Positions 3,569 to 59,260 of a stretch of 64,000 nt of DNA are shown here, piece by piece (position 1 is the stretch's first letter; every line of letters begins with the position of its first letter). The DNA is taken from the NCBI RefSeq assembly GCF_006345805.1, contig NC_043010.1, forward strand, positions 52,266,001 through 52,330,000, given 5' to 3'. The position numbers and the translations under genes were made by a program. The stretch is from Octopus sinensis. Lineage: Eukaryota. The notes beneath the pieces are model-generated. The model had not been told where the DNA came from. It made no database searches and was given only the letters and a program-made list of their open reading frames with translations.

Positions 3569-3570
3569 TT

Positions 3571-33623: not shown

Positions 33624-33818
33624 AGTTCAAACCGGTTCAAACTGGTTCAAACCGGTTCAAACTGGTTCAAATCTATAAATAGTATCTATAAATAGAATCT
33701 ATAAATAGAATCTATAAATAGAATCTATAAATAGAATCTATAAATAGAATCTATAAATAGAATCTATAAATAGTACCTATAAATAGAATCTATAAATAGA
33801 ATCTATAAATAGAATCTA

Positions 33819-33854
<36 letters not shown>

Positions 33855-35080
33855 AGAATCTATAATTAGAATCTATAAATAGAATCTATAAAAAGAATCT
33901 ATAAATAGAATCTATAAATAGTATCTATAAATAGAATCTATAAATAGAATCTATAAATAAATAAATAAATAAATAAATAAATAGAATCTATAAATAGAAT
34001 CTATAAATAGAATCTATAAATAGAATCTATAAATAGTATCTATCAATGGAATCTATAAATAGAATCTATAAATAGAATCTATAAATAAATAAATAAATAA
34101 ATAGAATCTATAAATAGAATCTACAAATAGAATCTATAAATAGAATCTATAAATAGAATCTATAAATAGAATCTATAAAAAAATAAATAAATAAATAAAT
34201 AAATAGAATCTATAAATAGAGTCTGTAAATAGAATCTATAAAGAGAACCTATAAATAGTATCTACAAATAGAATCTATAAATAGAATCTATAAATAGTAT
34301 CTATAAATAGAATCTATATATAGAATCTATAAATAGTACCTATAAACAGAATCTATAAATAGAATCTATAAATAGAATCTATAAATAAATAAATAAATAA
34401 ATAAAAAATAAATAAATAAATAGAATCTATTATTCTATAAATAGAATCTATGAATAGAATCTATTTATGGACACTATTTATTTATTTATTTCTTTATTTA
34501 TTTATTTCAAACTGGTTCAAACCGGTTCATACCGTTCAAACCGGATCAAACCAGTTCAAACACTTTCATCAAACGTTTTTCATTAGACATTTTCATCAAA
34601 CATTTTTCATCGGACATATTCATCAGACATTTTCATCAAAAATTTTCATCAAACATTTTCATCAAACATTTTCATCAGACATTTTGATCCGGTTTGAACC
34701 GGTTTTATTCGATTTGTACCAGTTTCATCCGGTTTAAACCGTATCAAACCAATTCAAACTGGTTCAAGCCGGTTCAAACCGGATCAAACCAATTCGAACC
34801 GGTTCAAACCGGGTCAAACCAGTTCAAACCGGTTCAAACTGGTTCAAAACGATTCAAACTGGTTCAAATCTATAAATAGTATCTATAAATAGAATCTATA
34901 AATAGAATCTATAAATAGAATCTATAAATAGAATCTATAAATAGTATCTATAAATAGAATCTATATATAGAATCTATAAATAGTACCTATAAATAGAATC
35001 TATAAATAGAATCTATAAATACAATCTACACATAGAATCTATAAATAGAATCTATAAATAGAATCTATAAATAGAATCTA

Positions 35081-35111
<31 letters not shown>

Positions 35112-35983
35112 CTAGTATCTATAAATAGAGTCTGTAAATAGAATCTATAAATAGAATCTATAAATAGAATCTACAAATAGAATCTATAAATAGAATCTAT
35201 AAATAGTATCTATAAATAGAATCTATAAATAGAATCTATATATAGAATCTATAAATAAATAAATAAATGAATAAATAAATAAATAAATAAATAGAATCTA
35301 TAAATAGAATCTATAAATAGAATCTATTTATAGATACTATTTATTTATTTATTTATTTATTTATAGATTCTATTTATAGATTCTATAAATAGATTCTATT
35401 TATAGATTCTATAAATAGAATCTATGAATAGAATCTATTTATGGACACTATATATTTATTTATTTATTTATTTATTTATTTCAAACTGGTTCAAACCGGA
35501 TCAAACCAGTTCAAACACTTTCATCAAACGTTTTTCATTAGACATTTTCATCAAACATTTTTCATCAGACATATTCATCAGACATTTTCATCAAAAATTT
35601 TCATCAAACACTTTCATCAAACATTTTCATCAGACATTTTGATCCGGTTTGAACCGGTTTTATTCGATTTGTACCAGTTTGGTCCGGTTTAAACCGTATC
35701 AAACCAATTCAAACTGGTTCAAGCCGGTTCAAACCGGATCAAACCAATTCAAACCGGTTCAAACAGGGTCAAACCAGTTCAAACCGGTTCAAACTGGTTC
35801 AAAACGATTCAAACTGGTTCAAATCTATAAATAGTATCTATAAATAGAATCTATAAATAGAATCTATAAATGGAATCTATAAAAAGAATCTATAAATAGA
35901 ATCTATAAATAGAATGTATAAATAGAATCTATAAATAGTATCTATAAATAGAATCTATAAATAGAATCTATAAATAGAATCTA

Positions 35984-36014
<31 letters not shown>

Positions 36015-36299
36015 ATAGAATCTATAAATAGAATCCATAAAGAGAATCTATAAATAGAATCTATAAATAGAATCTATAAATAGAATCTATAAATTGAATC
36101 TATAAATAAATAAATAAATAAATAGTATCTATAAATAGAATCTATAAATAGAATCTATAAATAGAATCTAACAATAAATAAATAAATGAATAAATAAATA
36201 AATATATAAATAAATAAATAGAATCTATAAATGGAATCTATAAATAGAATCTATAAATAGAATCTATAAATAAATAAATAAATAAATAAATAGTATCTA

Positions 36300-36467
36300 G
36301 CAGGGGTGGCTGTGTGGTAAGTAGCTTGCTAACCCACCACATGGTTCCGGGTTCAGTCCCACTGCGTGGCATCTTGGGCAACTGTCTTCTGCTATAGCCC
36401 CGGGCCGACCAATGCCTTGTGAGTGGATTTGGTAGACGGAAACTGAAAGAATCCTGTCCTATATATG

Positions 36468-36498
<31 letters not shown>

Positions 36499-36721
36499 TT
36501 GTGTGTCTGTGTTTGTTCCCCTAGCATTGCTTGACAACCGATGCTGGTGTGTTTACGTCCCCGTCACTTAGCGGTTTGGCAAAAAGAGACCGATAGAATA
36601 AGTACTGGGCTTACAAAAAGAATGAGTCCCGGGGTCGAGTTGCTCGACTAAAAGGCGGTGCTCCAGCATGGCCGCAGTCAAAATGACTGAAACAAGTAAA
36701 AGAGTAAAGAGAGTAAAAGAG
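36300..36721 (+). mobile_element. Full-length SINE family 1 inserted in satellite B
   Basis: tatcta|gcaggggtggctgtgtggtaag...gagtaaaagag|taaatagaatc. Confidence 0.92.
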
Positions 36722-36865
36722 TAAATAGAATCAATAAATAGAATCTATAAATAGAACCTATAAATAGAATCTATAAATAGTCGCTATAAATAGAAGCTAT
36801 AAATAAAAGCTATAAAATAGAAGCTATAAATAGAAGCAACAAATAGAATCTATAAATAGAATCTA

Positions 36866-36908
<43 letters not shown>

Positions 36909-37093
36909 ATAGAATCTATAAATAGAATCTATAAATAGAATCTACAAATAGAATCTATAAATAGAATCTATAAATAGAATCTATAAATAGAATCTATAAT
37001 TAGAATCTATAAATAAATAAATAAATAAATAAATAAATATATAAATAGAACCTATAAATAGAGTCTGTAAATAGAATCTATAAATAGAATCTA

Positions 37094-37136
<43 letters not shown>

Positions 37137-39218
37137 ATAGAATCTATAAATAGAATCTATTTATAGATACTATTTATTTATTTATTTATTTATTTATGTA
37201 TAGATTCTATTTATAGATTCTATTTATAGATTCTATTTATAGATTCTATTTATAGATTCTATTTATAGATTCTATTTATAGATTCTGTTTATAGATTCTA
37301 TAAATAGAATCTATAAATAGAATCTATTTATAGATACTATTTATTTATTTATTTATTTATATATTTAGTTATCGATTCTATTTATAGATTCTATTTATAG
37401 ATACTATATATAGATTCTATTTATAGATTCTATTTATAGATTCTATTCATTTATTTATTTATTTATTCATTTATTTATAGATTCTATTATAGATTCTATT
37501 TATAGATTCTATTTATAGATACTATTTATAGATTCTATTTATAGATTCTATTTATAGATACTATATATAGATTTGAACCAGTTTGAACCGGTTTGAAATG
37601 GTTTGACCCGGTTTGAACTGGTTTGATCCGGCTTGAACCGGTTTGAATTGGGTAGATCCGGTTTGAACCAATTCAAAACGGTTCAAACTGGTTCAAACCA
37701 GTTCAAACCGGATCAAACCAGTTCAGACACTTTCATCAAACACTTTCATCAACCGTTTTTCATTGGACATTTTCATCAAAGATTTTTCATCAGACATATT
37801 CATCAGACATTTTCCTCAAAAATTTTCATTAAAACATTTTCATCAAACATTTTCATCAGACATTTTGATCCGGTTTGAACCGGGTTTATTCGATTTGTAC
37901 CGGTTTGGTCCGGGTTAAACCGTATGAAACCAATTCAAACCAGTTCAAACCGGTTCAAACTGGTTCAAATCTATAAATAGTATCTATAAATAGAATCTAT
38001 AAATAGAATCTATAAATAGAATCTATAAAAAGAATCTATAAATAGAATCTATAAATAGAATCTATAAATAGTATCTATAAATAGAATCTATAAATAGAAT
38101 CTATAATAGAATCAATAAATAAATAAATAATAAATAAATAAATAGAATCTATAAATAGAATCCATAATAGAATCTTAAAATAGAATCTATAATAGAATCT
38201 ATAAATAAAATAAATAAATAAATAGTATTTATAAATAGAATCTATAAATAGAATCTATAAATAGAATCTATAAATAGAATCTATAAATAGAATCTATAAA
38301 TAAATAAATAAATGAATAAATAAATAAATATATAAATAAATAAATTGAATCTATAAATGGAATCTATAAATAGAATCTATAAATAGTAGCTATAAATAGA
38401 AGCTATAAATAAAAGCTATAAAATAGAAGCTATAAATAGAAGCAATAAATAGAGACTATAAATAGAATCTATAAATAATTAAATAAATAAATAAATAAAT
38501 AAATAGAATCTATAAATAGAATCTATAAATAGAATCTATAAATAATATCTATAAATAGAATCTATAAATAGAATCTATAAATAGAATCTATAAATAAATA
38601 AATAAATAAATATATAAATAAATAAATAGAATCTATAAATAGAATCTATAAATTGAATCAATAAATAGAATCAATAAATAGAATCTATAATAAATGAATA
38701 AATGAATAAATAAATAAATATATAAATAAATAAATAGAATCTATAAATAGAATCTATAAATTGAATCTATAAATAGAATCTAAAATAAATAAATAAATGA
38801 ATAAATAAATAAAAATAAATAAATAAATAGAATCTAAAAATGGAATCTATAAATAGAATCTATAAATAGAATCTATATATAAATAAATAAATAAATAAAT
38901 AGTATCTATAAATAGAATCGATAAATAGAATCTATAAATAGAATCTATAAATAGAATCTATAAATAGAATCTATAAATAGTAGGTATAAATAGAAGCTAT
39001 AAATAAAAGCTATAAATAGAAGCTATAATAGAAGCAATAAATAGAATCTATAAATAGAATATATAAATAAATAAATAAATAAATAAATAAATAGAATCTA
39101 TAAATAGTATCTATAAATAGAATCTATAAAAAGAATCTATAAATAGAATCTATAATAGAATCTATAAATAGTATCTATAAATAGAATCTATAAATAGATC
39201 TATAAATAGAATCAATAA

Positions 39219-39249
<31 letters not shown>

Positions 39250-40036
39250 ATAGAATCTATAAATAGATCTATAAATAGAATCTTAAAATAGAGTCTATAA
39301 ATAGAATCTATAAATAAATAAATAAATAAATAGTATTTATAAATAGAATCTATAAATAAATAAATAAATGAATAAATAAATAAATATATAAATCAATAAA
39401 TAGAATCTATAAATAAAATCTATAAATAGTAGCTATAAATAGAAGCTATAAATAAAAGCTATAAAATAGAAGCTATAAATAGAAGCAATAAATAGAATCT
39501 ATAAATAGAATCTATAAATAATTAAATAAATAAATAAATAAATAAATAGAATCTATAAATAGAATCTATAAATAGAATCTATAAATAATATCTATAAATA
39601 GAATCTATAAATAGAATCTATAAATAAATAAATAAATAAATAAATAAATATATATATAAATAAATAAATAGAATCTATAAATAGTATCTATAAATAGAAT
39701 CTATAAATAGAATCTATAAATAGAATCTATAAATAAATAAATAAATAAATAAATAAATAGAATCTATAAATAGAATCCATAAAGAGAATCTATAAATAGA
39801 ATCTATAAATAGAATCTATAAATAGAATCTATAAATTGAATCTATAAATAAATAAATAAATAAATAGTATCTATAAATAGAATCTATAAATAGAATCTAT
39901 AAATAGAATCTAACAATAAATAAATAAATGAATAAATAAATAAATATAAAAATAAATAAATAGAATCTATAATGGAATCTATAAATAGAATCTATAAATA
40001 GAATCTATAAATAAATAAATAAATAAATAGTATCTA

Positions 40037-40453
40037 GCAGGGGTGGCTGTGTGGTAAGTAGCTTGCTAACCCACCACATGGTTCCGGGTTCATCCCACTG
40101 CGTGGCATCTTGGGCAACGTCTTCTGCTATAGCCCCGGGCCGACCAATGCCTTGTGAGTGGATTTGGTAGACGGAAACTGAAAGAAGCCTGTCCTATATA
40201 TGTATATATATATATATATGTGTGTTGTGTTTGTGTGTCTGTGTTTGTTCCCCTAGCATTGCTTGACAACCGATGCTGGTGTGTTTACGTCCCCGTCACT
40301 TAGCGGTTTGGCAAAAAGAGACCGATAGAATAAGTACTGGGCTTACAAAAAGAATGAGTCCCGGGGTCGAGTTGCTCGACTAAAAGGCGGTGCTCCAGCA
40401 TGGCCGCAGTCAAAATGACTGAAACAAGTAAAAGAGTAAAGAGAGTAAAAGAG
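40037..40453 (+). mobile_element. Duplicate of the 36300 SINE, same insertion junctions
   Basis: Identical flanks and diagnostic variants (caggggtgg, gctaacccaccac, ttacaaaaagaatgagt, agtcaaaatgac); 3737 bp downstream. Confidence 0.92.
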
Positions 40454-40741
40454 TAAATAGAATCTATAAATAGAATCTATAAATAGAACCTATAAATAGA
40501 ATCTATAAATAGTCGCTATAAATAGAAGCTATAAATAAAAGCTATAAATAGAAGCTATAAATAGAAGCAACAAATAGAATCTATAAATAGAATCTATAAT
40601 AAATAAATAAATAAATATAAATAAATAAATAAATAAATAAATAGAATCTATAAATAGAATCTATAAATAGAATCTACAAATAGAATCTATAAATAGAATC
40701 TATAAATAGAATCTATAAATAGAATCTATAATTAGAATCTA

Positions 40742-40772
<31 letters not shown>

Positions 40773-43340
40773 ATAGAATCTATAAATAGAATCTATAAAT
40801 AGAATCTATTTATAGATACTATTTATTTATTTATTTATTTATTTATTTATAGATTCTATTTATAGATTCTATTTATAGATTCTATTTATAGATTCTATTT
40901 ATAGATTCTATTTATAGATTCTGTTTATAGATTCTATAAATAGAATCTATAAATAGAATCTATTTATAGATACTATTTATTTATTTATTTATTTATATAT
41001 TTAGTTATCGATTCTATTTATAGATTCTATTTATAGATACTATATATAGATTCTATTTATAGATTCTATTTATAGATTCTATTCATTTATTTATTTATTT
41101 ATTCATTTATTTATAGATTTATTATAGATTCTATTTATAGATTCTATTTATAGATACTATTTATAGATTCTATTTATAGATTCTATTTATAGATACTATA
41201 TATAGATTTGAACCAGTTTGAACTGGTTTGAAATGGTTTGACCCGGTTTGAACTGGTTTGATCCGGTTTGAACCGGTTTGAATTGGGTAGATCCGGTTTG
41301 AACCAATTCAAAACGGTTCAAACTGGTTCAAACCAGTTCAAACCGGATCAAACCAGTTCAGACACTTTCATCAAACACTTTCATCAAACGTTTTTCATTG
41401 GACATTTTCATCAAAGATTTTTCATCAGACATATTCATCAGACATTTTCCTCAAAAATTTTCATTAAAACATTTTCATCAAACATTTTCATCAGACATTT
41501 TGATCCGGTTTGAACCGGTTTTATTCGATTTGTACCGGTTTGGTCCGGGTTAAACCGTATGAAACCAATTCAAACAGTTCAAACCGGTTCAAACTGGTTC
41601 AAATCTATAAATAGTATCTATAAATAGAATCTATAAATAGAATCTATAAATAGAATCTATAAAAAGAATCTATAAATAGAATCTATAAATAGAATCTATA
41701 AATAGAATCAATAAATAAATAAATAAATAAATAAATAAATAGAATCTATAAATAGAATCCATAAATAGAATCTTAAAATAGAATCTATAAATAGAATCTA
41801 TAAATAAATAAATAAATAAATAGTATTTATAAATAGAATCTATAAATAGAATCTATAAATAGAATCTATAAATAGAATCTATAAATAGAATCTATAAATA
41901 GAATCTATAAATAAATAAATAAATGAATAAATAAATAAATATATAAATAAATAAATATAATCTATAAATGGAATCTATAAATAGAATCTATAAATAGTAG
42001 CTATAAATAGAAGCTATAAATAAAAGCTATAAAATAGAAGCTATAAATAGAAGCAATAAATAGAGACTATAAATAGAATCTATAAATAATTAAATAAATA
42101 AATATAAATAAATAAATAGAATCTATAATATAATCTATAAATAGAATCTATAATAATATCTATAAATAGAATCTATAAATAGAAACTATAAATAGAATCT
42201 ATAAATAAATAAATAAAAAATAAATAAATATATAAATAATAAATAGAATCTATAAATAGAATCTATAAATGAATCAATAAATAGAATCAATAAATAGAAT
42301 CTATAAATAAATGAATAATATGAATAAATAATAAATATATATATAAATAAATAGAATCTATAAATAGAATCTATAATTGAATCTATAAATAGAATCTATA
42401 AATAAATAAATAAATGAATAAATAAATAAAAATATAAATAAATAAATAGAATCTAAAAATGGAATCTATAAATAGAATCTATAAATAGAATCTATAAATA
42501 AATAAATAAATAAATAAATAGTATCTATAAATAGAATCTATAAATAGAATCTATAAATAGAATCTATAAATAGAATCTATAAATAGAATCTATAAATGGA
42601 ATCTATAAATAGTAGGTATAAATAGAAGCTATAAATAAAAGCTATAAAATAGAAGCTATAAATAGAAGCAATAAATAGAATCTATAAATAGAATATATAA
42701 ATAAATAAATAAATAAATAAATAAATAGAATCTATAAATAGTATCTATAAATAGAATCTATAAAAAGAATCTATAAATAGAATCTATAAATAGAATCTAT
42801 AAATAGTATCTATAAATAGAATCTATAAATAGAATCTATAAATAGAATCAATAAATAAATAAATAAATAAATAAATAAATAGAATCTATAAATAGAATCC
42901 ATAAATAGAATCTTAAAATAGAATCTATAAATAGAATCTATAAATAAATAAATAAATAAATAGTATTTATAAATAGAATCTATAAATAAAATCTATAAAT
43001 AGAATCTATAAATAGAATCTATAAATAGAATCTATAATAGAATCTATAAATAAATAAATAAATGAATAAATAAATAAATATATAAATCAATAAATAGAAT
43101 CTATAAATAAAATCTATATATAGTAGCTATAAATAGAAGCTATAAATAAAAGCTATAAAATAGAAGCTATAAATAGAAGCAATAAATAGAATCTATAAAT
43201 AGAATCTATAAATAATTAAATAAATAAATAAATAAACAAATAGAATCTATACATAGAATCTATAAATAGAATCTATAAATAGAATCTATAAATAATATCT
43301 ATAAATAGAATCTATAAATAGAATCTATAAATAGAATCTA

Positions 43341-43375
<35 letters not shown>

Positions 43376-45416
43376 ATATATATATAAATAAATAAATAGA
43401 ATCTATAAATAGAATCTATAAATTGAATCAATAAATAGAATCAATAAATAGAATCTATAAATAAATGAATAAATGAATAAATAAATAAATATATAAATAA
43501 ATAAATAGAATCTATAAATAGAATCTATAAATTGAATCTATAAATAGAATCTATAAATAGAATCTATAAATAAATAAATAAATGAATAAATAAATAAAAA
43601 TATAAATAAATATATAGAATCTAAAAATGGAATCTATAAATAGATTATCGATTCTCTTTATAGATTCTATTTATAGATTCTATTTATAGATTCTATTTAT
43701 TTATTTATTTATTTATTTATATATAGATTCTATTTATAGATTCTATTTATTGATTCTATTTATAGACACTATTTATAGATTTGAACCAGTTTGAACCGGT
43801 TTGAACCAGTTTGAACCGGTTTGAACTGGTTTGAACCAGTTTGAACTGGTTTGATACGGTTTAAACGGGACCAAACTGGTACGAATCGAATAAAACCGGT
43901 TCAAACCGGATCAAAATGTGTAATGAAAAATTTTTGATGAAAGTGTTTGATGAAAGTATTTGAACTGGTTTGATCCGGTTTGAACCGGTTTGAACCGGTT
44001 TGAATCAGTTTGAACCGTTTTAAATTGGTTAGATCCTGTTTGAATCAATTCAAAACAGTTCAAACCGGTTCAAACAGGATCAAACCAGTTCAGACACTTT
44101 CATCAAACTCTTTCATCAAACGTTTTTCATTAGACATTTTCATCAAACATTTTTCATCGAACATTTTCATCAGACATTTTCATCAAAAATTTTCATCAAA
44201 CATTTTCATCAAACATTTTCATCAAACATTTTCATCAGACATTTTGATCCGGTTTGAACCGGTTTTATTCGACTTGTACCGGTTTGGTCCGGTTTAAACC
44301 GTATCAAATCAGTTCAAACTGGTTCAAACCGGCTCGAACCGGATGAAACCAGTTCAGACCGATTCAAACCGGGGCAAACCAGTTCAAACCAGTTCAAAGT
44401 GGTTCAAACCGGTTCAAACGGGTTCAAATCTATAAATAGTATCTATAAATAGAATCTATAAATAGAATCTATAAATAGAATCTATAAATAGAATCTATAA
44501 ATAGTATCTTTAAATAGAATCTATAAATAGAATCTATAAATAGAATCTATAAATAGAATCTATGAATAGAATCTAAAAATAGAATCTATAAATAAATAAA
44601 TAAATAAATAAATAAATAGTATCTATAAATAGAATCTATAAATAGAATCTATAAATAGAATCTATAAATAAATAAATAAATAAATAAATAAAAAAAAAAT
44701 AAATAATTAAATAGAATCTATAAATAGAATCTATAAATAGAATCTATAAAAAGAATCTATAAATAGAATCTATAAATAGAATCTATAAATAAAATCTATG
44801 AATAGAATCTATAAATAGAATCTATAAATAAAAAAATAAATAAATAGTATCTATAAATAGAATCTATAAATAGAATCTATAAATAGAATCTATAAATAGA
44901 ATCTATAAATAGTATCTATAAATAGAATCTATAAATAGAATCTATAAATAGAATCTATAAATAAATAAATAAATAAATAAATATTATCTATAAATAGAAT
45001 CTATGAATAGAATCTATAAATAGAATCTATAAATAAATAAATAAATAAATAAATATTATCTATAAATAGAATCTATGAATAGAATCTATAAATAGAATCT
45101 ATAAATAGAATCTATAAATAGAATCTATGAATAGAATCTATAAATAAATAAATAAATAAATAGTATCTATAAATAGAATCTATAAATAGAATCTATAAAT
45201 AGAATCTATAAATAAATAAAAAAATAAATAAATAATAAATAAATAATAGTATCTATAAATAGAATCTATAAATAGAATCTATAAATAGAATGTATAAATA
45301 ATATCTATAAATAGAATCTATAAATAGAAGCTATAAATAGAAGCTATAAATAGAAGCTATAAAGAGAAGCTATAAATAGATGCTTTAAATAGAAGCTATA
45401 AATAGAAGCTATAAAT

Positions 45417-46772: not shown

Positions 46773-47413
46773 ATAGAGTTCAGACCTGATCAAACCAGTA
46801 CAAACCGGTTCAAACTGGTTCAAACTGTTCAAACCGGTTAAAACCGGAACAAACCAGTTCAAACACTTTCCTCAAACACTTTCATCAAACATTTTTCATC
46901 CGACATTTTCATCAAACATTAAACCGGTTCAAACCGGCTCAAACCAGATCAACCACATCAAACAAGTTCAAACTGGATCTAACCAATTCAAAACGGTTCA
47001 AACTGGTTCAAACCGATTCAAACCGGTTCAAACTGGATCAAACCAGTTCAAACACTTTCATCAAACACTTTCATCAAACGTTTTTCATCAGACATTTTCT
47101 CAGACATTTTCATCAAAAATTTTAATCAAACATTTTCATCAAACATTTTCATCAAACATTTTCATCATACATTTTGATCCGGTTTGAACCGGTTTTATTC
47201 GATTTGTACCGGTTTGGTCCAGTTTAAACCATATCAAACCAATTCAAACTGGTTCAAACCGGTTCGAACCGGTTCAAACCAGTTCAAACCGGTTCAAACC
47301 GCTTCAAACTGGTTCAAATCTATAAATAGCATCTGTAAATAGAATCTATAAATAGAATCTATAAATAGAATCTATAAATAGTATCTATAAATAGAATCTA
47401 TATATAGAATCTA

Positions 47414-47453
<40 letters not shown>

Positions 47454-48164
47454 ATCTATAAATAGAATCTATAATAGAATCTATGAATAGAATCTATAAA
47501 TAGAATCTATAAATAGAATCTATAAATAGAATCTATAAATAGAATCTATAAATAAATAAATAAATAAATAAATAGTATCTATAAATAGAATCAATAAATA
47601 GAATATATAAATAAATAAATAAATAAATAAATAGTATCTATAAACAGAATCTATAAATAGAATCTATAAATAGAATCTATAAATAGAATCTATAAATAGA
47701 ATCTATAAATAGAATCTATAAATAGTGTCTATAAATAGAATCTATAAATAGAATCTATAAATAAATAAATAAATAAATAAATAAAGAGTATCTATAAATA
47801 GAATCAATAAATAGAATCTATAAATAGAATCTATAAATAGAATCTATAAATAGTATCTATAAATAGAGTCTATAAATAGAATCTATATATAGAATCTATA
47901 AATAAATAAATAAATAAATAAATAGAATCTATAAATAGAATCTATAAATAGAATCTATAAATAAATAAATAAATAAATAAATAGAATCTATAAATAGGAT
48001 CTATAAATAGTAGCTATAAATAGAAGCTATAAACAGAAGCTATAAACAGAAGCTATAAATAGAAGCTATAAATAGAAGCTATAAAGAGAAGCTATAAATA
48101 GAAGCTATAAATAGAAGCTATAAATAGAAGCTATAAAGAGAAGCTATAAATAGAAGCTATAAAT

Positions 48165-48523
48165 ATTGAACATTCCAGAGAGGGGATTTGAAGGTAAAGT
48201 GGAGGAATTGGAAGAAGGAATATTGAACATTTCAGAGAGGGGGATTTGAAGGTGAAGGGGAGAAATGGGAAGAAGGAATATTCAACATTCCAGAGAGGGG
48301 GATTTCAAAGTGAAGAGGAGGAATGGGTAGATGGAATATTGAACATTCCAGAGAGGGGGATTTTAAGGTGAAGGGTAGGAATGGGAAGAAGGAATATTGA
48401 ACATTCCAGAAAGGGTGATTTGACGGTAAAGGGGAGGAATGGGAACAAGGAATATCTAACATTCCAGAGAGGGGTATTTGAAGGTAAAGGGTAGGAATGG
48501 GAAGAAGGAATATTGAACATTCC
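48165..48523 (+). repeat. Satellite A island (about 6 monomers) with the same entry and exit junctions
   Basis: gctataaat|attgaacattcc ... gaacattcc|atagagttcagacctgatc. Confidence 0.9.
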
Positions 48524-51012
48524 ATAGAGTTCAGACCTGATCAAACCAGTTCAAACCGGTTTAAACTGGTTCAAACTGTTCAAACCGGTTCAAACCGGAT
48601 CAAACCAGTTCAAACACTTTCATCAAACACTTTCATCAAACATTTTTCATCAGACATTTTCATCAGACATTTTCATCAAACATTAAACCGGTTCAAACCG
48701 GCTTAAACCGGATCAACCACATCAAACAAGTTCAAACCGGATCTAACCAATTCAAAACGGTTCAAACTCGTTCAAACTGGTTCAAACCGGATCAAACCAG
48801 TTCAAACACTTTCATCAAACATTTTTCATTAGACATTTTCATGAAACATTTTTCATCAGAAATTTTCATCAGACATTTTCATCAGACATTTTGATCCGGT
48901 TTTAACCTGTTTTATTCGATTTGTACCGGTTTGGTCCGGTTTGAACCGTATCAAACCAGTCCAAACTGGTACAAGCCGGATCAAACCGGATCAAACCAGT
49001 TCAAACCGGTTCAAACCGGGTCAAACCAGTTCAAACCGGTTCAAACTAGTTCAAACCGGTTCAAACAGGTTCAAACCGGTTCAAACCGGATCAAACCAGT
49101 TCAAACCAGTTCAAACACTTTCATCAAACATTTTCCCCAAACATTTTCATCAAACATTTTCATCAAACGTTTATCACCAAAAATTTATCAACAAACATTT
49201 TCATCAAACATTTTCATAAAACATTTTCATCAGACATTTTGATCCGGTTTGAACCTGTTTTATTCGATTTGTACCGGTTTGGTCCGGTTTGAACCGTATC
49301 AAACCAGTTCAAACTGGTTCAAACCGGTTCAAACCGGATCAAACCAGTTCAAACCGGTTCAAACTGGTTCAAGCCGGTTCAAACCAGATCAGATCCAGTT
49401 CAAAGTGGTTCAAACTGGTTCAAACTGGTTCAAAACGGTTCAAACTGGTTCAAACAAGATCAAACCAGATCAAACTAGTTCAAACACATTCATCAAACAC
49501 TTTCATCAAACATTTTTCATCAGACATTTTCATCAGACATTTTAATCAGACATTTTCATCAGTAATTTTCATCAGACATTTTCATCAAACATTTTCATGA
49601 AACATTTTCATCAGACATTTTGATACGGTTTGAACCGGTTTGAACCGCATCAAACAAGTTCAAACTGGTTCAAACCGGTTCAAACCGCATCAAACCAGTT
49701 CAAACCGGATCAAACCGGGTCAAACTAGTTCAAACCGGTTCAAATTAGTTCAAACAGGTTCAAACTGGATCAAACCAGATCAAACCAGTTCAAACACTTT
49801 CATCAAACACTTTCATCAAACATTTTTCATTAGACATTTTCATGAAACATTTTCGGCAAACATTTTTCATCAAACATTTTCATCAGACATTTTGATCCGG
49901 TTTGAACCGGTTTTATTCGATTTGTACCGGTTTGAACCAGTTTGAACTGGTTTGAATTGGTTTGACCAGGTTTGAACTTGTCTGATCTGGTTGATCCGGT
50001 TTGAGCCGGTTTGAACCGGTTTAATGTTTGATGAAAATATCTGATGAAAATGTCTGATGAAAAATGTTTGATGAATGTGTTTCATGAAAGTGTTTGAACT
50101 GGTTTTATCCGGTTTGAACCGGTTTGAACCAGTTTGAACCAGTTTGAACTGGTTTGATCTGGTCTGAACCGGTTTTAAACTGTTTGATCCGGTCTGAACT
50201 TGGTTTGAACCGGTTTAAAACGGTTTTTTATTCGGTTTGTACCGGTTTGGTCCGGTTTGAATCGGTTTGAACTGGACCGATCAAACATTTATCCTCATTT
50301 ATCATCAAACATTTATCATCAAACACTTTTCATTGTCATCAAACATTTATCATCAAAAGTTTTCATTAAACATTGTCACCAAACATTTTCATCAAACATT
50401 TTCATCAAACGTTTATCATCAAACATTTATCAACAAACATTTTCATATGACAATTATCATGAAACTTTATCATCACACATTTTCATGAAACATTTTTCAT
50501 CAAACATGTATATCAAACATTTTCATCAAACATTTACCTCAAACATTTATCAACAAACATTTTCATCAAACGTTTATCATCAAACATTTATCAACAAACA
50601 TTTTCATTAGACAATTATCATGAAACATTTATCTTCAAACATTTTCATCAAACATTTATCATCAAACATTTATCATCAAACATTTTCATAAAACATTTTT
50701 CATCAAACATTTTCATCAAACATTTTCATCAAACATTTACATCAAACATTTTCATCAATCATTTCATCAAACATTTTCATCAGACATTTTCATCAAACAA
50801 TTTTGAAAGTTTTGGTCAAACCGGTTTAAACCGGATCAAACCGGATCAAATTGGTTTGACCCTGTCTCGTTCGGTGCGGTTTGAACAGATTTGATCCGGT
50901 TTTAACCGGTTTGAAGCGGTTTGAACCAGTTTCAACCGGTTTGATGCGGTTTGAACTGGTTTGATCCGGTTTGAACCGGTTTTATCCGGTTTGAACTGGT
51001 TTGATTCGCATC

Positions 51013-51893
51013 GAACATTCCAGAGAGGGGGATTTGAGGAGTGAAGGGGAGGAAGGGGTGGAAGGTTTGTAGAACATTCCAGAAAGGGGGATTTGAGAGG
51101 TGGAGAGGAGAAATGGCGAGAAAGGAATATTGAACATTCCGGAGAGGGGGATTTGAGGTGTGAAGGGGAGGAAGGGGAGGAAGGAATGTTGAAAATTCCA
51201 GAGAGGGGGATTTGAGATGTGAAGGGCAGGAAGGGGGGAAAGGAATGTTGAACATTCCACAGAGGGGGATTTGAGGGGTGAAGGGGAGGAAGGAATGTTG
51301 AACATTCCTTAGAGGGGGAATTCAGGTGTGAAGTGAAGGAAGGAATATTGAATATTCCAGAGAGGGGGATTTTTGAGATGAAGGGGAGGAAGGGGAGGAG
51401 GGAATGTTGAACATTCCAGAGGGGGGATATGAGGGGTGAAGGAGAGGAAGGGGAGGAAGGAATATTGAACATTCCTGAGAGGGGGATTTTGAGAGGTAAA
51501 GGGGAGGAAGGGGAGGAAGGAATGTTGAACATTCCACAGAGAGGGATTTCAGGGGTGAAGGGGAGGAAGGGGAGGAAGGAATGTTGAACATTCCAGTGAG
51601 GGGATTTGAGGGGTGAAACGGAGGAAGGAATATTGAACATTCCAGAGAGGTGGATTTGAGAGGTGAAGAAGAGGAAGGGGAGGAAGGAATGTTGAACATT
51701 CCAGAGAGGGGGATTTGAGGGGTGAAGAGGAGAAACGGGAGGAAGGAATATTGAACATTCCAGAGAGGGGTTTTTGAGGGGTGAAGCGGTGGAAGGGGAG
51801 GAAGGAAAATAAAACATTCCAGAGAGGGGGATTTGAGAGGTGAAGGTGAGGAAGGAATATTGAACATTCCAGAGAGGGGGATTTGAGAGGTGA
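51013..51893 (+). repeat. Satellite A' subfamily island 1
   Basis: Frequent GGAATGTTGAACATTCC core and GATTTGAG(G/A)GGTGAA spacer, distinct from the main array. Confidence 0.9.
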
Positions 51894-52240
51894 AACATTT
51901 TCATCAAACGTTTATCATCAAACATTTATCAACAAACATTTTCATAAAACATTTTTCATTAAACACTTTCATCAAGCATTTTCATCAAACATTTTCATCA
52001 GACATTTTCATCAAACAATTTTGAATGTTTTGGTGAAACCGTTTTAGACCGGATCAAACCGGATCAAACTGGTTTCACCCTGTCTGGTTCGGTCCGGTTT
52101 CAACAGGTTTGATCCGGTTTGAAGCGGTTTGAACCGGTTTGAACCAGTTTGAACCGGTTTGAACCGGTTTGATGCGGTTTGAACTGGTTTGATCCGGTTT
52201 GAGCAAGTTTTATCCGGTTTGAACTGGTTTGAACCGCATC

Positions 52241-52915
52241 GAATATTCCAGAGGGGGTATTTCAGGGGTGAAGGAGAGGAAGGAATATTGAACATTCCAG
52301 AGAGGGGGATTTGAGAGATGAAGGGGAGGAAGGGGAGGAAGGAATTTTTAACATTCCAGAGAGGGGGATATGAGGGGGTGAAGGAGAGGAAGGGGAGGAA
52401 GGAATGTTGAACATTCCAGAGAGGTGGATTTGAAAGGTAAAGGGGAGGAAGGGGAGGAAGGAATGTTGAACATTCCAGAGAGGTGGATTTGAAAGGTAAA
52501 GGGGAGGAAGGGGAGGAAGGAATGTTGAACATTCCACAGAGGGGGATTTGAGGGGTGAAGGGGAGGAAGGGGCGGAAGGAATATTGAACATTCCAGAGAG
52601 GGGGATTTGGGAGATGAAGGGGAGGAACGGGAGGAAGGAATGTTGAACATTCCAGAGAGGGTGATATGAGGGGTGAAGGAGAGGAAGGGGAGGAAGGAAT
52701 ATTGAACATTCCAGAGAGGGGGATTTGAGAAATGAAGCGGAGGAAGGGGAGGAAGGAATGTTGAACATTCCACAGAGGGGGGTTTGATGGCTGAAGGGGA
52801 GGAAGGGGAGGATGTAATGTTGAACATTCCAGAGGGGGGATTTGAGGGGTGAACAGGAGGAAGGGGAGGAAGGAATGTTGAACATTCCAGAGAGGGGGAT
52901 TTGAGAGGGGGATTT
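52241..52915 (+). repeat. Satellite A' subfamily island 2
   Basis: Same diagnostic variants; the upstream D-C junction repeats at a 1218-bp offset (50798/52016). Confidence 0.9.
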
Positions 52916-53880
52916 TTTGAAAATGCTTGGTAAAAATTTTTGGTGAAACCGGTTCAAACCGGATCGAACCGGTTAAAACTGGTCAAAATTTTTTGGAAAA
53001 TATTTTGAAAATTTCAGTCAAGCCGGTTTGGTCAAATTTTGGCTGAAATATTGGTCAAACCAGTTCAAACCAGTTTGATACGGTTTGATCGAGTTTGAAC
53101 CGATTTGAACTGGTTTGATCCGCTTCGAACCGGTTTGAACTGGTTTGATCCGTTTTGAACCGGTTTGAACCGGTTTTATCCAGTTTCCACCTGTTTGGTC
53201 CGGTTTGATCTCGTTTGAACCTGACCGATCAAAACCTGACCGAACCAGACAGGGTCAAACCATTTTTATCCGGTTTAAACAACTTTGATCAAAACTTTCA
53301 AAAAATTTTGACCAAAAATTTTCATAAAATATTTGAAAATTTTTTACATATTCCGAAATTTGGTTTGATCCGGTTTGAACCGATTTGATCCGGTTTGGAC
53401 TGGTTTGATCCGTTTTGAACCGGTTAGATACGGTTTTAACTGGTTTGATCAGTTTTGAACCGGTTTGAACCGTTTTGAACCAGCTTGAACCGGTTTGATC
53501 TGGTTTGAACTGGTTTGATCCGGTTTGAACCGGTTTGATCCGGTTTGAACCGGTTTGATCCGGTTTGAACTGGTTTGATCCGTTTTGAACCGGCTTGAAC
53601 CAGTTTGAACCGATTTGATCCAGTTTGAACTGGTTTGATACGTTTTGAACCGGATTGATCCGATTTGAACTGGTTTGACCCGTTATGAACCGCTTTGAAC
53701 CGGTTTAAAACGGTTTGATCTGGTTTGAACTGGTTTGATCTGGGTTGAACCGGTTTAAGCCAGTTTGAACTTGTTTGGTCCGGTTTGGACCGGATCAAAC
53801 CAATTCAAGCCGGATCAAACCAGTTCAAACCGGATCAAACCGGTTCAAACTGGTTCAAACCGGATCAAACCAGATCAAAC

Positions 53881-56800
53881 CAGTTCAAACACTTTCATCA
53901 AACACTTTCATCAAACATTTATCATCAAACATGTATCATCAAACATTTTCATCAAATATTTTCATCAAACATTTTCATCAAACATTTTCATCAAACATTT
54001 ATCATCAAACATTTTCATCAAACATTTTCATCAAACATTTACACCAAACATTTTCAGGAAACATCTTAATCAAACATTTTCATCAAACGTTTTCAGCAAA
54101 CATTTTCATCAAACTTTTATCATCAAACATTTATCAACAAACATTTTCATTAAACATTTATCATCAAACATTTTCATCGAACATTTTCATCAAACATTTA
54201 CATCAAACATTTTCATCTAACATCTTAATCAAACATTTTCATCAAACATTTTCATCAAACAACTTAATCAAACATTTTCATCAAACATTATCATCAAACA
54301 TCTTAAACAAACATTTTCATCAAACATTATCATCAAACATCTTAAACAAACATTTTCATCAAACATTTTCACCACATATTTTCATCCAAACACTTTCATC
54401 AAACATTTTCATCAAACATTTTTCATTAAACACTTTCATCAAACATTTTCATCAAACATTTTTCATTAAACATTTTCATCAAACATTTTCATCAAACATT
54501 TATCATTAAACAATTATCATCAAACATTTTCATCAAACATTTATCATCAAACATGTATCATGAAATATTTTTCATCAAACATTTATCATCATACATTTTT
54601 CAACATACATTTTCATCAAACATTTTCACCAAACATTTTCATCAAACACTTTCATCAAACATTTATCATCAAACATTTATCATTAAACATTTATCATCAA
54701 ACTTTTATCATCAAACATTTTCATCAAACATTTATCATCAAACATTTTTCATCAAACATTTATCATCAACGTTTTCATTAAACATTTTTCATCAAACACT
54801 TTTCATCATCAAACATTTTCATCAAACGTTTATCATCAAACGTTTTCATCAAACATTTTCATCAAACATTTATCATCAAACATTTTCATCAAACATTTAT
54901 CATCAAACATTTTTATCAAACATTTTTCATCACAACACTTTCATCAAACATTTTCATCAAACTTTTATCATCAAATATTTATCAACAAACATTTATCATC
55001 AAACATTTATCATCAAACATTTTCATCAAACATTTTCATCAAACATTTATCATCAAACATGTATCATCAAACATTCTTCATAAAACATTTTCATCAAACA
55101 CTTTCATCAAAGATTTATTATCAAACACTTTCATCAAACGTTTATCAACAAACATTTATCATCAAACATTTATCATCAAACATTTTCATCAAACATTTTC
55201 ATCAAACATTTATCATCAAACATGTATCATCAAACATTTTTCATCAATCATTTATCATCAAACATTTATCATCAAACATTTATCGTCATTTATCATCAAA
55301 CATGTATCATCAAACATTTTTCATCAAACATTTTCATCAAACACTTTCATCAAACATTTTCATCAAACATTTTCATCAAACATTTATCATCAAACATGTA
55401 TCATCAAACATTTTTCATTAAACATTTTCATCAAACACTTTCATCAAACATTTTCATCAAACGTTTTCATTAAACATTTTCACCAAACATTTTCATCAAA
55501 CATTTTCATCAAACCTTTATCTTCAAACAGTTGTCAACAAACATTTTCATCAAACATTTATCATCAAACATTTTCATCAAACATTTATCATCAAACATTT
55601 TCATCAAACATTTTCATCAAACATTTACATCAAACATTTTCATCAAACATTTTCATCAAACATCTTAATCAAACATTTTCCTCAAACATCTTAATCAAAC
55701 ATTTTCATCAATCATTTATCATCAAACATTTATCATCAAACATTTATCGTCATTTATCATCAAACATTTATCATCAAACACTTTTCATCAAACATTTTCA
55801 TCAAACATTTATCATTAAACATTTTCATCAAATATTTGTTATCAAACATTTTCACCAAACATTTTCATCAAACATTTTCATCAAACGTTTTAATCAAACA
55901 TTTATCATTAAACATTTATCATCAAACATTTATCAACAAACATTTTCGTCAAACATTTATCATCAAACATTTTTCATCAAACATTTATCATCAAACGTTT
56001 TCATTAAACATTTTCACCAAACATTTCCATCAAACTTTTTCATCAAACGTTTATCATCAAACGTTTTCATCAAACATTTTCATCAAACATTTATCATCAA
56101 ACATTTTCATCAAACATTTATCATCAAACATTTTTATCAAACATTTTCATCACAACACTTTCATCAAACATTTTCATCAAACGTTTATCAACAAATATTT
56201 ATCAACAAACATTTATCATCAAACATTTATCATCAAACATTTTCATCAAACATTTTCATCAAACATTTATCATCAAACATGTATCATCAAACATTCTTCA
56301 TAAAACATTTTCATCAAACACTTTTATCAAAGATTTATTATCAAACACTTTCATCAAACGTTTATCAACAAACATTTATCATCAAACATTTTCATCAAAC
56401 ATTTTCATCAAACATTTATCATCAAACATGTATCATCAAACATTTATCGTCATTTATCATCAAACATGTATCATCAAACATTTTTCATCAAACATTTTCA
56501 TCAAACACTTTCATCAAACATTTTCATCAAACATTTTCATCAAACATTTATCATCAAACATGTATCATCAAACATTTTTCATTAAACATTTTCATCAAAC
56601 ACTTTCATCAAACATTTTCATCAAACATTTCATCAAACGTTTTCATTAAAATTTTCACCAAACATTTTCATCAAACATTTTCATCAAACCTTTATCTTCA
56701 AACAGTTATCAACAAACATTTTCATCAAACATTTACATCAAACATTTTCATCAAACATTTTCATCAAACATCTTAATCAAACATTTTCCTCAAACATCTT

Positions 56801-58285
56801 AATCAAACATTTTCATCAATCATTTATCATCAAACATTTATCATCAAACATTTATCGTCATTTATCATCAAACATTTATCATCAAACACTTTTCATCAAA
56901 CATTTTCATCAAACATTTATCATCAAACATTTTCATCAAATATTTGTTATCAAACATTTTCACCAAACATTTTCATCAAACATTTTCATCAAACGTTTTA
57001 ATCAAACATTTATCATTAAACATTTATCATCAAACATTTATCAACAAACATTTTCGTCAAACATTTATCATCAAACATTTTTCATCAAACATTTATCATC
57101 AAACGTTTTCATTAAACATTTTCACCAAACATTTCCATCAAACTTTTCATCAAACGTTTATCATCAAACGTTTTCATCAAACATTTCATCAAACATTTAT
57201 CATCAAACATTTTCATCAAACATTTATCATCAAACATTTTTATCAAACATTTTCATCACAACACTTTCATCAAACATTTTCATCAAACGTTTATCAACAA
57301 ATATTTATCAACAAACATTTATCATCAAACATTTATCATCAAACATTTTCATCAAACATTTTCATCAAACATTTATCATCAAACATGTATCATCAAACAT
57401 TCTTCATAAAACATTTTCATCAAACACTTTTATCAAAGATTTATTATCAAACACTTTCATCAAACGTTTATCAACAAACATTTATCATCAAACATTTCAT
57501 CAAACATTTTCATCAAACATTTATCATCAAACATGTATCATCAAACATTTATCGTCATTTATCATCAAACATGTATCATCAAACATTTTTCATCAAACAT
57601 TTTCATCAAACACTTTCATCAAACATTTTCATCAAACATTTTCATCAAACATTTATCATCAAACATGTATCATCAAACATTTTTCATTAAACATTTTCAT
57701 CAAACACTTTCATCAAACATTTTCATCAAACATTTTCATCAAACGTTTTCATTAAACATTTTCACCAAACATTTTCATCAAACATTTTCATCAAACCTTT
57801 ATCTTCAAACAGTTATCAACAAACATTTTCATCAAACATTTATCATCAAACATTTTCATCAAACATTTATCATCAAACATTTTCATCAAACATTTTCATC
57901 AAACATTTACATCAAACATTTTCCTCAAACATCTTAATCAAACATTTTCCTCAAACATCTTAATCAAACATTTTCATCAAACCTTTATCTTCAAACAGTT
58001 ATCAACAAACATTTTCATCAAATATTTGTTATCATACATTTTTCATCAAACATTTATCATCAAACATTATCATCAAACATTTATCGTCATTTATCATCAA
58101 ACATTTATCATCAAACACTTTCATCAAACATTTTCATCAAACATTATCATCAAACATTTTCATCAAATATTTGTTATCATACATTTTTCATCAAACATTT
58201 ATCATCAAACGTTTTCATTAAACATTTTCCCCAAACATTTTCATCAAACATTTTCATCAAACATTTATCAACAAACATTTACACC
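53881..58285 (+). repeat. Satellite D array (13/14-mer AAACATTTTCATC / AAACATTTATCATC) with a ~1.1-1.2-kb higher-order repeat
   Basis: The rare variant cacaacactttc recurs at 54931, 56151 and 57257 (spacings 1220 and 1106). Confidence 0.95.

Positions 58286-58770: not shown

Positions 58771-58816
<46 letters not shown>

Positions 58817-59210: not shown

Positions 59211-59260
<50 letters not shown>

What the first reader, a model, noticed from the sequence alone, without database searches (positions are those of the whole stretch)
33624..58285. Candidate system: a composite satellite whose modules are each a consensus site for a different conserved TF family
Seen: four unrelated short repeats are stitched into recurring cassettes, and two of them (A and D) also balloon into pure flanking arrays. 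Knowledge: the A core is the TEAD site ACATTCCA, B contains the MEF2 site CTA(A/T)4TAG, and C is the TFCP2/LSF and Grainyhead site; D matches ATF4-AARE and GATA sites more weakly. MEF2 and TEAD co-regulate muscle genes. Inference: a homotypic/heterotypic TF-site mega-array acting as TF sponge, super-enhancer-like element or chromocenter-bundling platform, or satellites selected because bound factors stabilise them. Alternative: palindromic cores favour amplification and only coincidentally resemble dimeric TF sites.
Basis: partly seen in the sequence, partly recalled or inferred. Interest (0 to 1): 0.85.

Follow-up and report, generated by a model that had tools for sequence, protein, structure and literature searches.

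The report
Interleaved satellite DNA block with TF-like motifs
This is a block of at least 50 kb made of four tandem-repeat (satellite) families in an animal genome; three of them spell textbook transcription-factor sites, but the sequence gives no sign that those sites are being preserved, so it looks like ordinary heterochromatic satellite DNA.

Summary
The repeats are real. There is a 58-mer A array (7881-33620, cut on the left by an assembly gap), a composite zone of A, B (13-mer), C (10-mer) and D (13/27-mer) blocks (33621-53884), and a pure D array (53885-58280).

The consensus matches for A (ACATTCCA, TEAD), B (CTATAAATAG, MEF2) and C (AACCGGTT, Grainyhead; 10-bp CNRG spacing, CP2) are exact. 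D's ATF4 match fails, and its GATA match exists only in a variant.

The "recurring cassettes" were not assembled repeatedly. Every junction type has the same sequence at all its recurrences, and the copies share private variants. So one ancestral composite was amplified by segmental duplication and fold-back inversion, after a SINE had inserted.

Variation does not protect the motifs. In A, the TEAD site is no better conserved than the A/T positions around it. In B, about 2 kb has decayed to (AAAT)n. In C, the central CpG is the most mutated position, and only 76 of about 450 units keep AACCGGTT.

Each module also fits other factors equally well (TATA, FOX, HSF, LIN54). Whether three exact matches exceed chance depends wholly on the assumed size of the motif universe (P 0.003-0.35).

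The TF-platform idea has a human precedent (HSat3-TEAD). Here it remains untested.

The parts
7779..7878 (.). 100-N assembly gap directly left of the A array. The true left extent of the array is unknown.
   Evidence: sequence
7881..33620 (+). Pure A satellite array: 443 units of 58 bp, about 90% identity between units at any lag, no strong higher-order period. The + strand is purine-rich (77%). 357 units keep ACATTCCA.
33621..36290 (+). Cassette type I, about 2.7 copies: C - B - (ATTT)n/b - C - D - c - C - B. Units are about 955-1200 bp.
36291..36730 (+). SINE-like retroelement, about 440 bp, inserted in a B array. A 98.4% identical copy lies at 40028-40462, and further family copies lie in both flanks.
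   Evidence: sequence
35822..43644 (+). Two copies of a ~3.75-kb segmental duplication (35822-39989 and 39576-43644, 91%). Each carries the SINE, a B|b fold-back, a c-C-D-c-C cassette and a ~2-kb B array.
36722..37573 (.). B(+)|b(-) macro-dyad (head-to-head inversion of the 13-mer array). For example, arms 36909-37039 and 37171-37301 are 131 nt and 97% complementary.
43641..44490 (.). Composite palindrome b-c-d-c | C-D-c-C-B. Arms 43718-43915 and 44293-44490 are 198 nt and 80% complementary.
45417..48164 (+). Two copies of cassette type III (A x2.4 - C - D - C - D - c - C - B). The 1229-bp unit is 95% identical overall, and its C-D-c-C core is 100% identical.
48165..50295 (+). A block (6.4 units) followed by alternating C / D / c blocks that share the same C>D and D>c junction sequences.
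50296..50799 (+). D' variant array (14/27-mer CATTTATCATCAAA), which carries the TTATCA (GATA-like) variant.
51013..52920 (+). A' variant (59-mer, 285-bp higher-order period) in two blocks separated by D-C-c. It contains the 8+8 dyad GGAATGTT-G-AACATTCC.
53060..53884 (.). C array, mostly in minus orientation (20-mer period GGTTTGATCCGGTTTGAACC), flipping to plus orientation at 53789.
53885..58280 (+). Pure D array, about 330 units of 13/27 bp with a ~1128-bp higher-order period. It ends abruptly in non-satellite sequence.

Best explanation
This is a heterochromatin-type block made of four satellite families in an animal genome rich in SINEs. I think the genome is an octopus, but that is from memory and untested.

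Inferred history:
1. One ancestral composite arose through a handful of junction events with 2-4 bp of microhomology: A>C at CCAG, C>B at AA, B>A at AATA, C>D at TCAAAC, D>c at TTTGA.
2. A SINE inserted into a B array.
3. Whole cassettes of 0.36, 0.95, 1.2 and 3.75 kb were then copied by unequal exchange or segmental duplication, and inverted by fold-back or template switching.
4. The A, B and D arrays expanded by the same processes.

The modules that flip orientation are C and B. They are the ones whose arrays are self-complementary and fold into hairpins, and hairpins favour slippage and strand switching.

The exact TEAD, MEF2 and Grainyhead/CP2 consensus strings are most likely by-products. 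Short AT-rich or dyad-symmetric repeat units often coincide with sites for dimeric TFs, and the pattern of variants shows no motif-specific protection. If the block has a role, it is probably structural (heterochromatin, non-B DNA) rather than enhancer-like.

Shown here: the anatomy, the junction identity, the duplications, the inversions and the variation pattern. Inferred: the mechanisms, the chromosomal context and the absence of a TF function.
For: - Four families and their arrays.
- Junction sequences are identical at every recurrence: C>B 8 times, B>A 3 times, A>C 3 of 4, C>D 14 times, D>c 9 times.
- Nine C-D-c-C cassettes are 70-100% identical and share private variants such as cgtttttcattagac and ttttattcgatttgtacc.
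- Segmental duplications of 3.75 kb (91%) and 1.23 kb (95%), and a 1.13-kb period in the D array. The two SINE copies inside the block are 98.4% identical, against 92% and 90% for the two best-matching flank copies (lower for the others).
- Macro-dyads with 131-198-nt arms.
- Single-strand DNA folding z-scores: C -7.45, B -3.5, A' -2.7, A -0.7, D no structure. Dyad tests: A' P=0.0005, A P=0.017.
- Variation:
  - The TEAD 8-mer is conserved at 0.971, against 0.9655 for the 24-bp block pos 6-29 that contains it. A/T positions are 0.970 inside the block and 0.966 outside it.
  - B positions 4-5 (the CT of CTA) are conserved at 0.886 and 0.859, and 1984 bp sit in (AAAT)n/(ATTT)n tracts.
  - C units: CCGG 53%, CCAG 15%, CTGG 11%. 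Only 76 exact AACCGGTT sites exist.
- Other factors fit the same modules, and HSE-like GAANNTTCNNGAR occurs 354 times.
- No RNA families, no tRNAs and no genuine ORFs.
- Closest published parallel: intermingled satDNAs with macro-dyad symmetries and conserved transition and inversion sites in Tribolium (PMC13081366).
Against: - Three exact consensus matches of about 16 bits in four modules is nominally unusual. It occurred in 0 of 3000 shuffle sets with my library, and the Poisson estimate is P about 0.03 if there are about 240 distinct specificities.
- In B, single-base variants pile up in the 3-nt linker outside the MEF2 10-mer (85 of 162 units). This is the direction expected if the motif were protected. 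However, it reflects essentially two amplified subfamily variants.
- The common C variants CCAG and CTGG still satisfy the CP2 half-site CNRG.
- A GGAAT-rich satellite does bind TEAD in human cells (PMC11526998), so binding by A is plausible.
- Chromosomal location, copy number genome-wide, chromatin state and occupancy are all unknown.
- Copy counts are not independent mutational events.
Confidence: 0.65

Rival explanations
1. TF-binding satellite platform, HSat3-type. The arrays are bound in vivo by TEAD (A), MEF2 or TBP (B) and Grainyhead/CP2 (C). They would act as depots or sponges, as nucleators of heterochromatin, or as chromocenter-bundling sites.
For: - Exact consensus sites at very high density.
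- Precedents: HSat3 binds TEAD1-4 and more than a dozen other TFs (PMC11526998); TEAD1 depots form on pericentromeric M-CAT clusters (10.1101/2025.05.02.651992); TF sites in mouse major satellite are needed for H3K9me3 (PMC13005003); D1 and Prod bundle satellites into chromocenters (PMC5957525, PMC6382350).
- Nominal rarity of three consensus hits.
- B point variants favour the linker outside the motif.
Against: - No motif-specific conservation in A or C, and decay of B to (AAAT)n.
- D has no match.
- Each module fits several unrelated factors equally well.
- The cassette recurrence comes from duplication, not from selection for co-occurrence.
- HSat3, a simple 5-bp repeat, is itself enriched for 42 of 828 JASPAR motifs (PMC11526998), so motif matches in satellites are the norm.
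- No relatives could be found to test conservation.
Confidence: 0.15
2. (Peri)centromeric satellite in which dyad symmetry and non-B DNA, rather than any TF site, is the selected feature.
For: - The 8+8 dyad in A' (P=0.0005), the 5+5 dyad in A (P=0.017) and the 8-bp palindrome in C.
- Hairpin folding of C and B arrays, macro-dyads and purine-rich tracts in A.
- Literature: dyad symmetries under 10 bp at centromeres (PMC5889037); macro-dyad satDNA networks (PMC13081366).
- An array next to an assembly gap is typical of unresolved (peri)centromeres.
Against: - D, the second pure array, has no dyad and no predicted structure.
- The main A array folds no better than shuffles (z = -0.7).
- Chromosomal position and CENP-A occupancy are unknown.
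Confidence: 0.1
3. Transposon-borne tandem repeats. The ~360-bp C-D-c-C cassette, in which a D core is flanked by inverted C arms, would be a MITE- or Helitron-like element carrying internal microarrays and spread by transposition.
For: Inverted C arms flank D at every copy, with identical boundaries. From my own knowledge, satellites carried by Helentron or MITE elements are known in molluscs.
Against: - No copy lies outside the block in either flank.
- No recognisable target-site duplications or terminal motifs.
- The copies sit inside larger duplicated segments whose flanks are also homologous, as expected for segmental duplication.
Confidence: 0.05
4. Partly an assembly artefact: the order or copy number of the cassettes is mis-assembled in a repeat-rich region.
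For: A 100-N gap abuts the A array. Some copies are 99-100% identical.
Against: Copies show graded divergence (70-100%) and consistent internal structure, which is unlike collapsed or chimeric joins.
Confidence: 0.05

Closest known systems
Human Satellite 3 as a megabase-scale TF binding platform (Franklin et al., PMC11526998); TEAD1 depots on pericentromeric M-CAT clusters (bioRxiv 10.1101/2025.05.02.651992)
   Same: The A monomer carries GGAAT/ATTCC and a perfect M-CAT (ACATTCCA = TGGAATGT) once per 58 bp, in at least 443 tandem copies. It also matches HSF-like and LIN54-like sites, both of which appear in the HSat3 motif list.
   Different: - A is a 58-mer with one or two GGAAT(G) cores per unit, not a (GGAAT)n pentamer.
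- There are no occupancy data.
- The organism is an invertebrate.
- Three other satellite families are interleaved with A.
- No sequence-level sign that the motif is protected.
Tribolium (peri)centromeric satDNA networks with macro-dyad symmetries (PMC13081366)
   Same: Different satDNAs form intermingled arrays. Orientation flips create long inverted arms. Transition and inversion junctions are conserved between copies.
   Different: The scale here is kilobases, not tens of kilobases to megabases. There are four families with very short monomers (10-58 bp). Chromosomal location is unknown.
Mouse major satellite with embedded TF sites (Bulut-Karslioglu 2012, as cited in PMC13005003)
   Same: [quoted passage not shown] The proposed function is TF-dependent heterochromatin formation.
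   Different: In mouse, loss of the TF sites was shown experimentally to abolish H3K9me3. Here nothing is tested, and the monomers are much shorter.
Drosophila D1/Prod and mouse HMGA1 satellite-binding chromocenter system (PMC5957525, PMC6382350)
   Same: Short simple satellites (5-12 bp) are recognised by sequence-specific proteins.
   Different: The binding proteins there are dedicated satellite binders (AT-hook proteins, Prod), not classical developmental TFs. There is no evidence of such binders here.
Centromeric satellites with short dyad symmetries / non-B DNA (Kasinathan and Henikoff, PMC5889037)
   Same: A', A and C contain dyads under 10 bp. C and B arrays are predicted to form hairpins.
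   Different: D lacks any dyad. Centromere identity is not established.

Membership tests
Satellite DNA (tandem head-to-tail arrays) | Head-to-tail monomers forming arrays of kilobases | tested here: met
   A 25.7 kb, D 4.4 kb, B up to about 2 kb, C up to about 0.8 kb
Satellite DNA (tandem head-to-tail arrays) | Homogenisation, higher-order repeats or segmental amplification | tested here: met
   285-bp period in A', ~1128-bp period in D, and cassettes of 0.36-3.75 kb at 91-100% identity
Satellite DNA (tandem head-to-tail arrays) | High genome-wide copy number and heterochromatic location | not testable with these tools
   Only this window is available. No related DNA was found in the collections.
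TF-binding satellite platform (HSat3 type) | Dense exact matches to a TF consensus | tested here: met
   ACATTCCA 391 times, CTAWWWWTAG 397, AACCGGTT 76. D has none.
TF-binding satellite platform (HSat3 type) | Matches exceed what comparable repeats give by chance | tested here: inconclusive
   0 of 3000 shuffle sets gave three 16-bit hits, but with a 113-motif library that I seeded after the fact. Poisson P is 0.003-0.35 depending on the size of the motif universe. A palindrome-matched control raises the hit rate 7-10 fold. JASPAR and the rest of the genome's satellites were not available.
TF-binding satellite platform (HSat3 type) | Variants spare the motif positions | tested here: not met
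   - A: no difference for A/T positions (0.970 vs 0.966), and C23 is the weakest base of the block.
- C: the central CpG is the most mutated position.
- B: mixed. Point variants favour the linker, but about 2 kb has converted to (AAAT)n.
TF-binding satellite platform (HSat3 type) | In vivo occupancy by the factor | not testable with these tools
   Needs ChIP, CUT&Tag or DiMeLo-seq
Centromeric dyad-symmetry / non-B satellites | Dyad symmetries under 10 bp enriched over shuffles | tested here: inconclusive
   A' P=0.0005, A P=0.017, C P=0.076, B P=0.50, D P=0.71. Folding z-scores: C -7.45, B -3.5, A' -2.7.
Centromeric dyad-symmetry / non-B satellites | CENP-A occupancy or centromeric position | not testable with these tools
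   No chromosome context
Macro-dyad multi-satellite networks (Tribolium type) | Intermingled satDNAs with inverted arrays and conserved transition sites | tested here: met
   Inverted arms of 131-198 nt. Identical junctions at all recurrences.
Transposon-borne tandem repeats (MITE/Helentron type) | Dispersed copies with defined termini and target-site duplications | tested here: not met
   No copies in either flank. No target-site duplications seen at cassette edges. The genome-wide test was not possible.
Super-enhancer-like element | Active chromatin marks and nearby target genes | not testable with these tools
   No gene-like ORFs or RNA genes in the 64-kb window. Chromatin data are not available.

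The most novel reading that the evidence does not exclude
An invertebrate (probably cephalopod) genome carries a heterochromatic block in which separate satellite families are each occupied in vivo by a different deeply conserved developmental TF: TEAD on A, MEF2 on B, Grainyhead/CP2 on C. That would be an HSat3-like TF depot or heterochromatin-nucleation system that arose independently of the primate one, in modular form.
Probability: 0.07. Interest if true: 0.65.

Novelty: new member of a known kind. Interest (0 to 1): 0.3.

Why it matters
If the arrays were really bound, this would extend the recent human finding that satellites can act as TF platforms (HSat3-TEAD) to an invertebrate, and to several factors at once. 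That would suggest a general route by which satellites acquire function.

As the evidence stands, the value is more modest. The block is a clean worked example of how a multi-satellite region is built: single junction events with microhomology, a SINE insertion as a time marker, then cassette amplification and fold-back inversions. It is also a caution that perfect TF consensus strings in short repeats are weak evidence of function.

Tried and rejected
- Finding the satellites elsewhere through the long artefactual ORFs of the arrays. A protein search with the A'+C ORF found nothing.
- Exact-pattern scans of metagenome contigs. The A core gave no hit. The B dimer gave one unrelated 1.6-kb contig, L001, with just two units and no array.
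- A SINE pattern in viral contigs gave no hit.
- A full-text search for the SINE and A sequences gave no hit. Literature searches for octopus or cephalopod satellites found nothing specific. The organism is therefore not confirmed.
- Rfam, tRNA and telomere scans found nothing relevant.
- The long ORFs in the arrays (up to 1226 aa on the minus strand of A, others on C/c blocks and on the plus strand of D) are rejected as genes. The periods (58, 13/27 and 10 bp) are not multiples of three, and, by my reading, stop codons are scarce on these low-complexity repeat strands.
- Common descent of the modules (C and D share TCAAAC; A and D share AACATT). My hand estimate of the chance of such shared 6-mers is about 0.06 and 0.37, so this is not significant and I did not pursue it.
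- Reading the CCAG/CTGG variants of C as proof of germline methylation. I have hedged this, because the flanks have CpG observed/expected of about 1, and because the variants sit in 20/30-mer periods, so copy counts are not independent events.
- G-quadruplex potential in A is weak: only 12 motifs in 25.7 kb.

Full report
**What is there**

TRF and a k-mer map show that about 50 kb of the window is satellite DNA built from four families.
- A: 58-mer GGAGGAAGGAATATTGAACATTCCAGAGAGGGGGATTTGAAGGTGAAGGGGAGGAAGG.
- B: 13-mer AATCTATAAATAG, with frequent decay into (AAAT)n.
- C: 10-mer CCGGTTCAAA, present in both orientations.
- D: 13/27-mer TCAAACATTTTCA.

A fills 7881-33620 with 443 units. This is upstream of the coordinates given, and it begins directly after a 100-N assembly gap, so its true size is unknown. 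The interval 33621-53884 is a mosaic of all four families. D alone fills 53885-58280 and ends abruptly in non-satellite DNA. B also forms arrays of about 2 kb. The flanks are full of microsatellites and copies of a ~430-bp SINE-like element. There are no tRNAs, no Rfam families and no real ORFs. From memory the SINE looks like the abundant octopus SINE, but no tool could confirm the organism.

**Motif claims**

Counts:
- ACATTCCA (TEAD/M-CAT): 357 of 443 A units, plus 34 in the mosaic.
- CTAWWWWTAG (MEF2): 397 sites.
- AACCGGTT (Grainyhead): only 76 sites in about 450 C units.
- CNRG-N6-CNRG (CP2): about 205 per strand. Any 10-bp repeat that contains CNRG satisfies this.
- D: 4 matches in total to the CARE consensus TGATGNAAT. 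GATA sites appear only in the TTATCA variant.

So three of the four identifications are exact and the fourth fails. The same modules also match other textbook sites. B is a perfect TATA box and a FOX site. A has a PU box, a GAGA site, a LIN54 site and an HSE-like GAANNTTCNNGAR (354 copies). C has a LIN54 site.

**How the cassettes arose**

Every junction type has the same sequence at each of its recurrences: C>B 8 times, B>A 3 times, A>C 3 of 4, C>D 14 times and D>c 9 times. The junctions show 2-4 bp of microhomology.

Nine copies of a ~360-bp C-D-c-C cassette are 70-100% identical and share private variants. Larger units are duplicated as blocks: 3.75 kb at 91% and 1.23 kb at 95%. D has a ~1.13-kb period.

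A SINE sits in a B array at 36291-36730, and its copy at 40028-40462 is 98.4% identical. The two best-matching flank copies are 92% and 90% identical, and the others are more diverged. The order of events was therefore: array, then SINE insertion, then segmental duplication.

B and C arrays flip orientation at fold-back points, giving inverted arms of 131-198 nt. The modules that flip are the ones whose arrays are self-complementary. Single-strand DNA folding gives z = -7.45 for C, -3.5 for B, -2.7 for A', -0.7 for A, and no structure for D. A' carries an 8+8 dyad, GGAATGTT-G-AACATTCC (P=0.0005).

The recurring cassettes are thus copies of one ancestral composite, not repeated assembly of TF modules. 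The closest published parallel is the intermingled, macro-dyad satDNA organisation with conserved transition sites in Tribolium (PMC13081366).

**Do variants spare the motifs?**

I aligned each array to its consensus with a wrap-around alignment.
- A: the TEAD 8-mer is 0.971 conserved. The 24-bp block that contains it (positions 6-29) averages 0.9655. A/T positions are 0.970 inside that block and 0.966 outside it. The heterogeneity comes from hypervariable G runs. C23, a core base of GGAATG, is the weakest position of the block at 0.930.
- B: the C and T of CTA are among the most variable positions (0.886 and 0.859), and about 2 kb has become (AAAT)n/(ATTT)n. Single-base variants do cluster in the 3-nt linker outside the MEF2 10-mer (85 of 162 units), but these are essentially two amplified subfamily variants.
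- C: the central CpG is the most mutated site. Units read CCGG 53%, CCAG 15% and CTGG 11%. Transitions there run at 13% and 21%, against 1.8% and 4.7% at the neighbouring C and G. I do not claim methylation as the cause, because the flanks have CpG observed/expected of about 1 and copy counts are not independent events.

**Chance**

With a 113-consensus library written from memory, a hit of 16 bits or more occurs in 0.6-4% of shuffled units, and three such hits never occurred in 3000 trials. That library was seeded after the fact with these three motifs and is far smaller than the real motif universe.

A Poisson estimate over the 87 distinct 8-mers in the four consensus arrays gives P(3 or more) = 0.003, 0.026, 0.09 and 0.35 for 100, 239, 400 and 800 distinct specificities. 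Random C-like units with an 8-bp palindrome hit a 16-bit consensus 7.4% of the time, which is 7-10 times the unconstrained rate. A simple 5-bp human satellite is itself enriched for 42 of 828 JASPAR motifs (PMC11526998). The finding was also picked out of a genome-wide scan. I therefore regard "more than chance" as unresolved.

**Comparison with known systems**

- Human HSat3 arrays bind TEAD1-4 and more than a dozen other TFs, and act as platforms (PMC11526998).
- TEAD1 forms inactive depots on pericentromeric M-CAT clusters (bioRxiv 10.1101/2025.05.02.651992).
- TF sites in mouse major satellite are required for heterochromatin formation (PMC13005003).
- D1 and Prod bundle satellites into chromocenters (PMC5957525, PMC6382350).
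- Short dyads and non-B DNA are proposed centromere features (PMC5889037).

Module A, with its GGAAT...ATTCC dyad and perfect M-CAT, is the most credible candidate for HSat3-like behaviour, but nothing here shows binding.

**Verdict**

This is an ordinary, well-structured multi-satellite block, and a new member of a known kind. The TF-platform reading stays a low-probability hypothesis (about 0.07-0.15) that only occupancy data, genome-wide satellite controls and sister-species comparison can decide. Attempts to find related DNA elsewhere failed.

Noticed in passing
window 7779-7878: A run of 100 N (scaffold gap) sits immediately before the first A unit. The A array is truncated by the assembly and may be much larger.
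   Followed up: yes
window 6612-7029, 36291-36730, 40028-40462, 62777-63166 (+); 4093-4424, 5262-5505, 3381-3572 (-); 59525-59940: At least eight full or partial copies of one ~430-bp SINE-like element, 74-100% identical. It has a B-box-like head, an internal (TA)n/(TG)n tract and an AGTAAAAG-repeat tail. ARAGORN and Rfam do not recognise it. From memory it resembles the abundant octopus SINE, which I did not test.
   Followed up: partly
window 7101-7723: A second dispersed-repeat type (...cgattagatcgaccccagtacgcaaccggtacttaatt...) is present as three adjacent partial copies at 82-85% identity. TRF reports a 185-bp period.
   Followed up: partly
window 7759-33441 (minus strand), 50846-53798 (minus strand) and 53765-57937 (plus strand): Long ORFs, up to 1226 aa, run through the A, A', C/c and D arrays. 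They appear to be artefacts of low-complexity repeat strands on which stop codons are scarce. The repeat periods are not multiples of 3, and a protein search found no homologue.
   Followed up: yes
window 33621-53884 (C blocks) versus flanks 1-7778 and 58281-64000: The CpG in the C unit shows about 5-fold more transitions than the neighbouring C and G, yet the flanking DNA has CpG observed/expected of about 0.9-1.05. This points either to local methylation of the satellite or to amplification of a few variants. It is unresolved.
   Followed up: partly
window 58761-59270 and 61661-61998: GA-rich 29/128-bp repeats grade into (ACAG)n, and there is a long (ATAC)85 microsatellite in the right flank. 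Long (TA)n tracts lie in the left flank (for example 3127-3381).
   Followed up: no
window 63467-63751: A 144-bp unit is repeated twice (87% matches) next to a (TG)n tract. I did not examine it further.
   Followed up: no
window 1023-1040: A short telomere-like fragment, TTAGGGTTAGGGGTGGGG, on the minus strand. It is isolated and not an array.
   Followed up: no
L001 571-596: An unrelated 1.6-kb metagenome contig (SMUY01231379.1) carries exactly two tandem B-like units (AATCTATAAATAGAATCTATAAATAG) in otherwise non-repetitive, GC-richer sequence. This looks like a chance match or an iteron-like direct repeat, not the satellite.
   Followed up: partly
window 50296-50799 and the D array 53885-58280: A D subfamily with TTATCA (CATTTATCATCAAA) creates GATA-like sites in about a third of D units. 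The canonical D unit matches none of my 113 consensus sites.
   Followed up: yes
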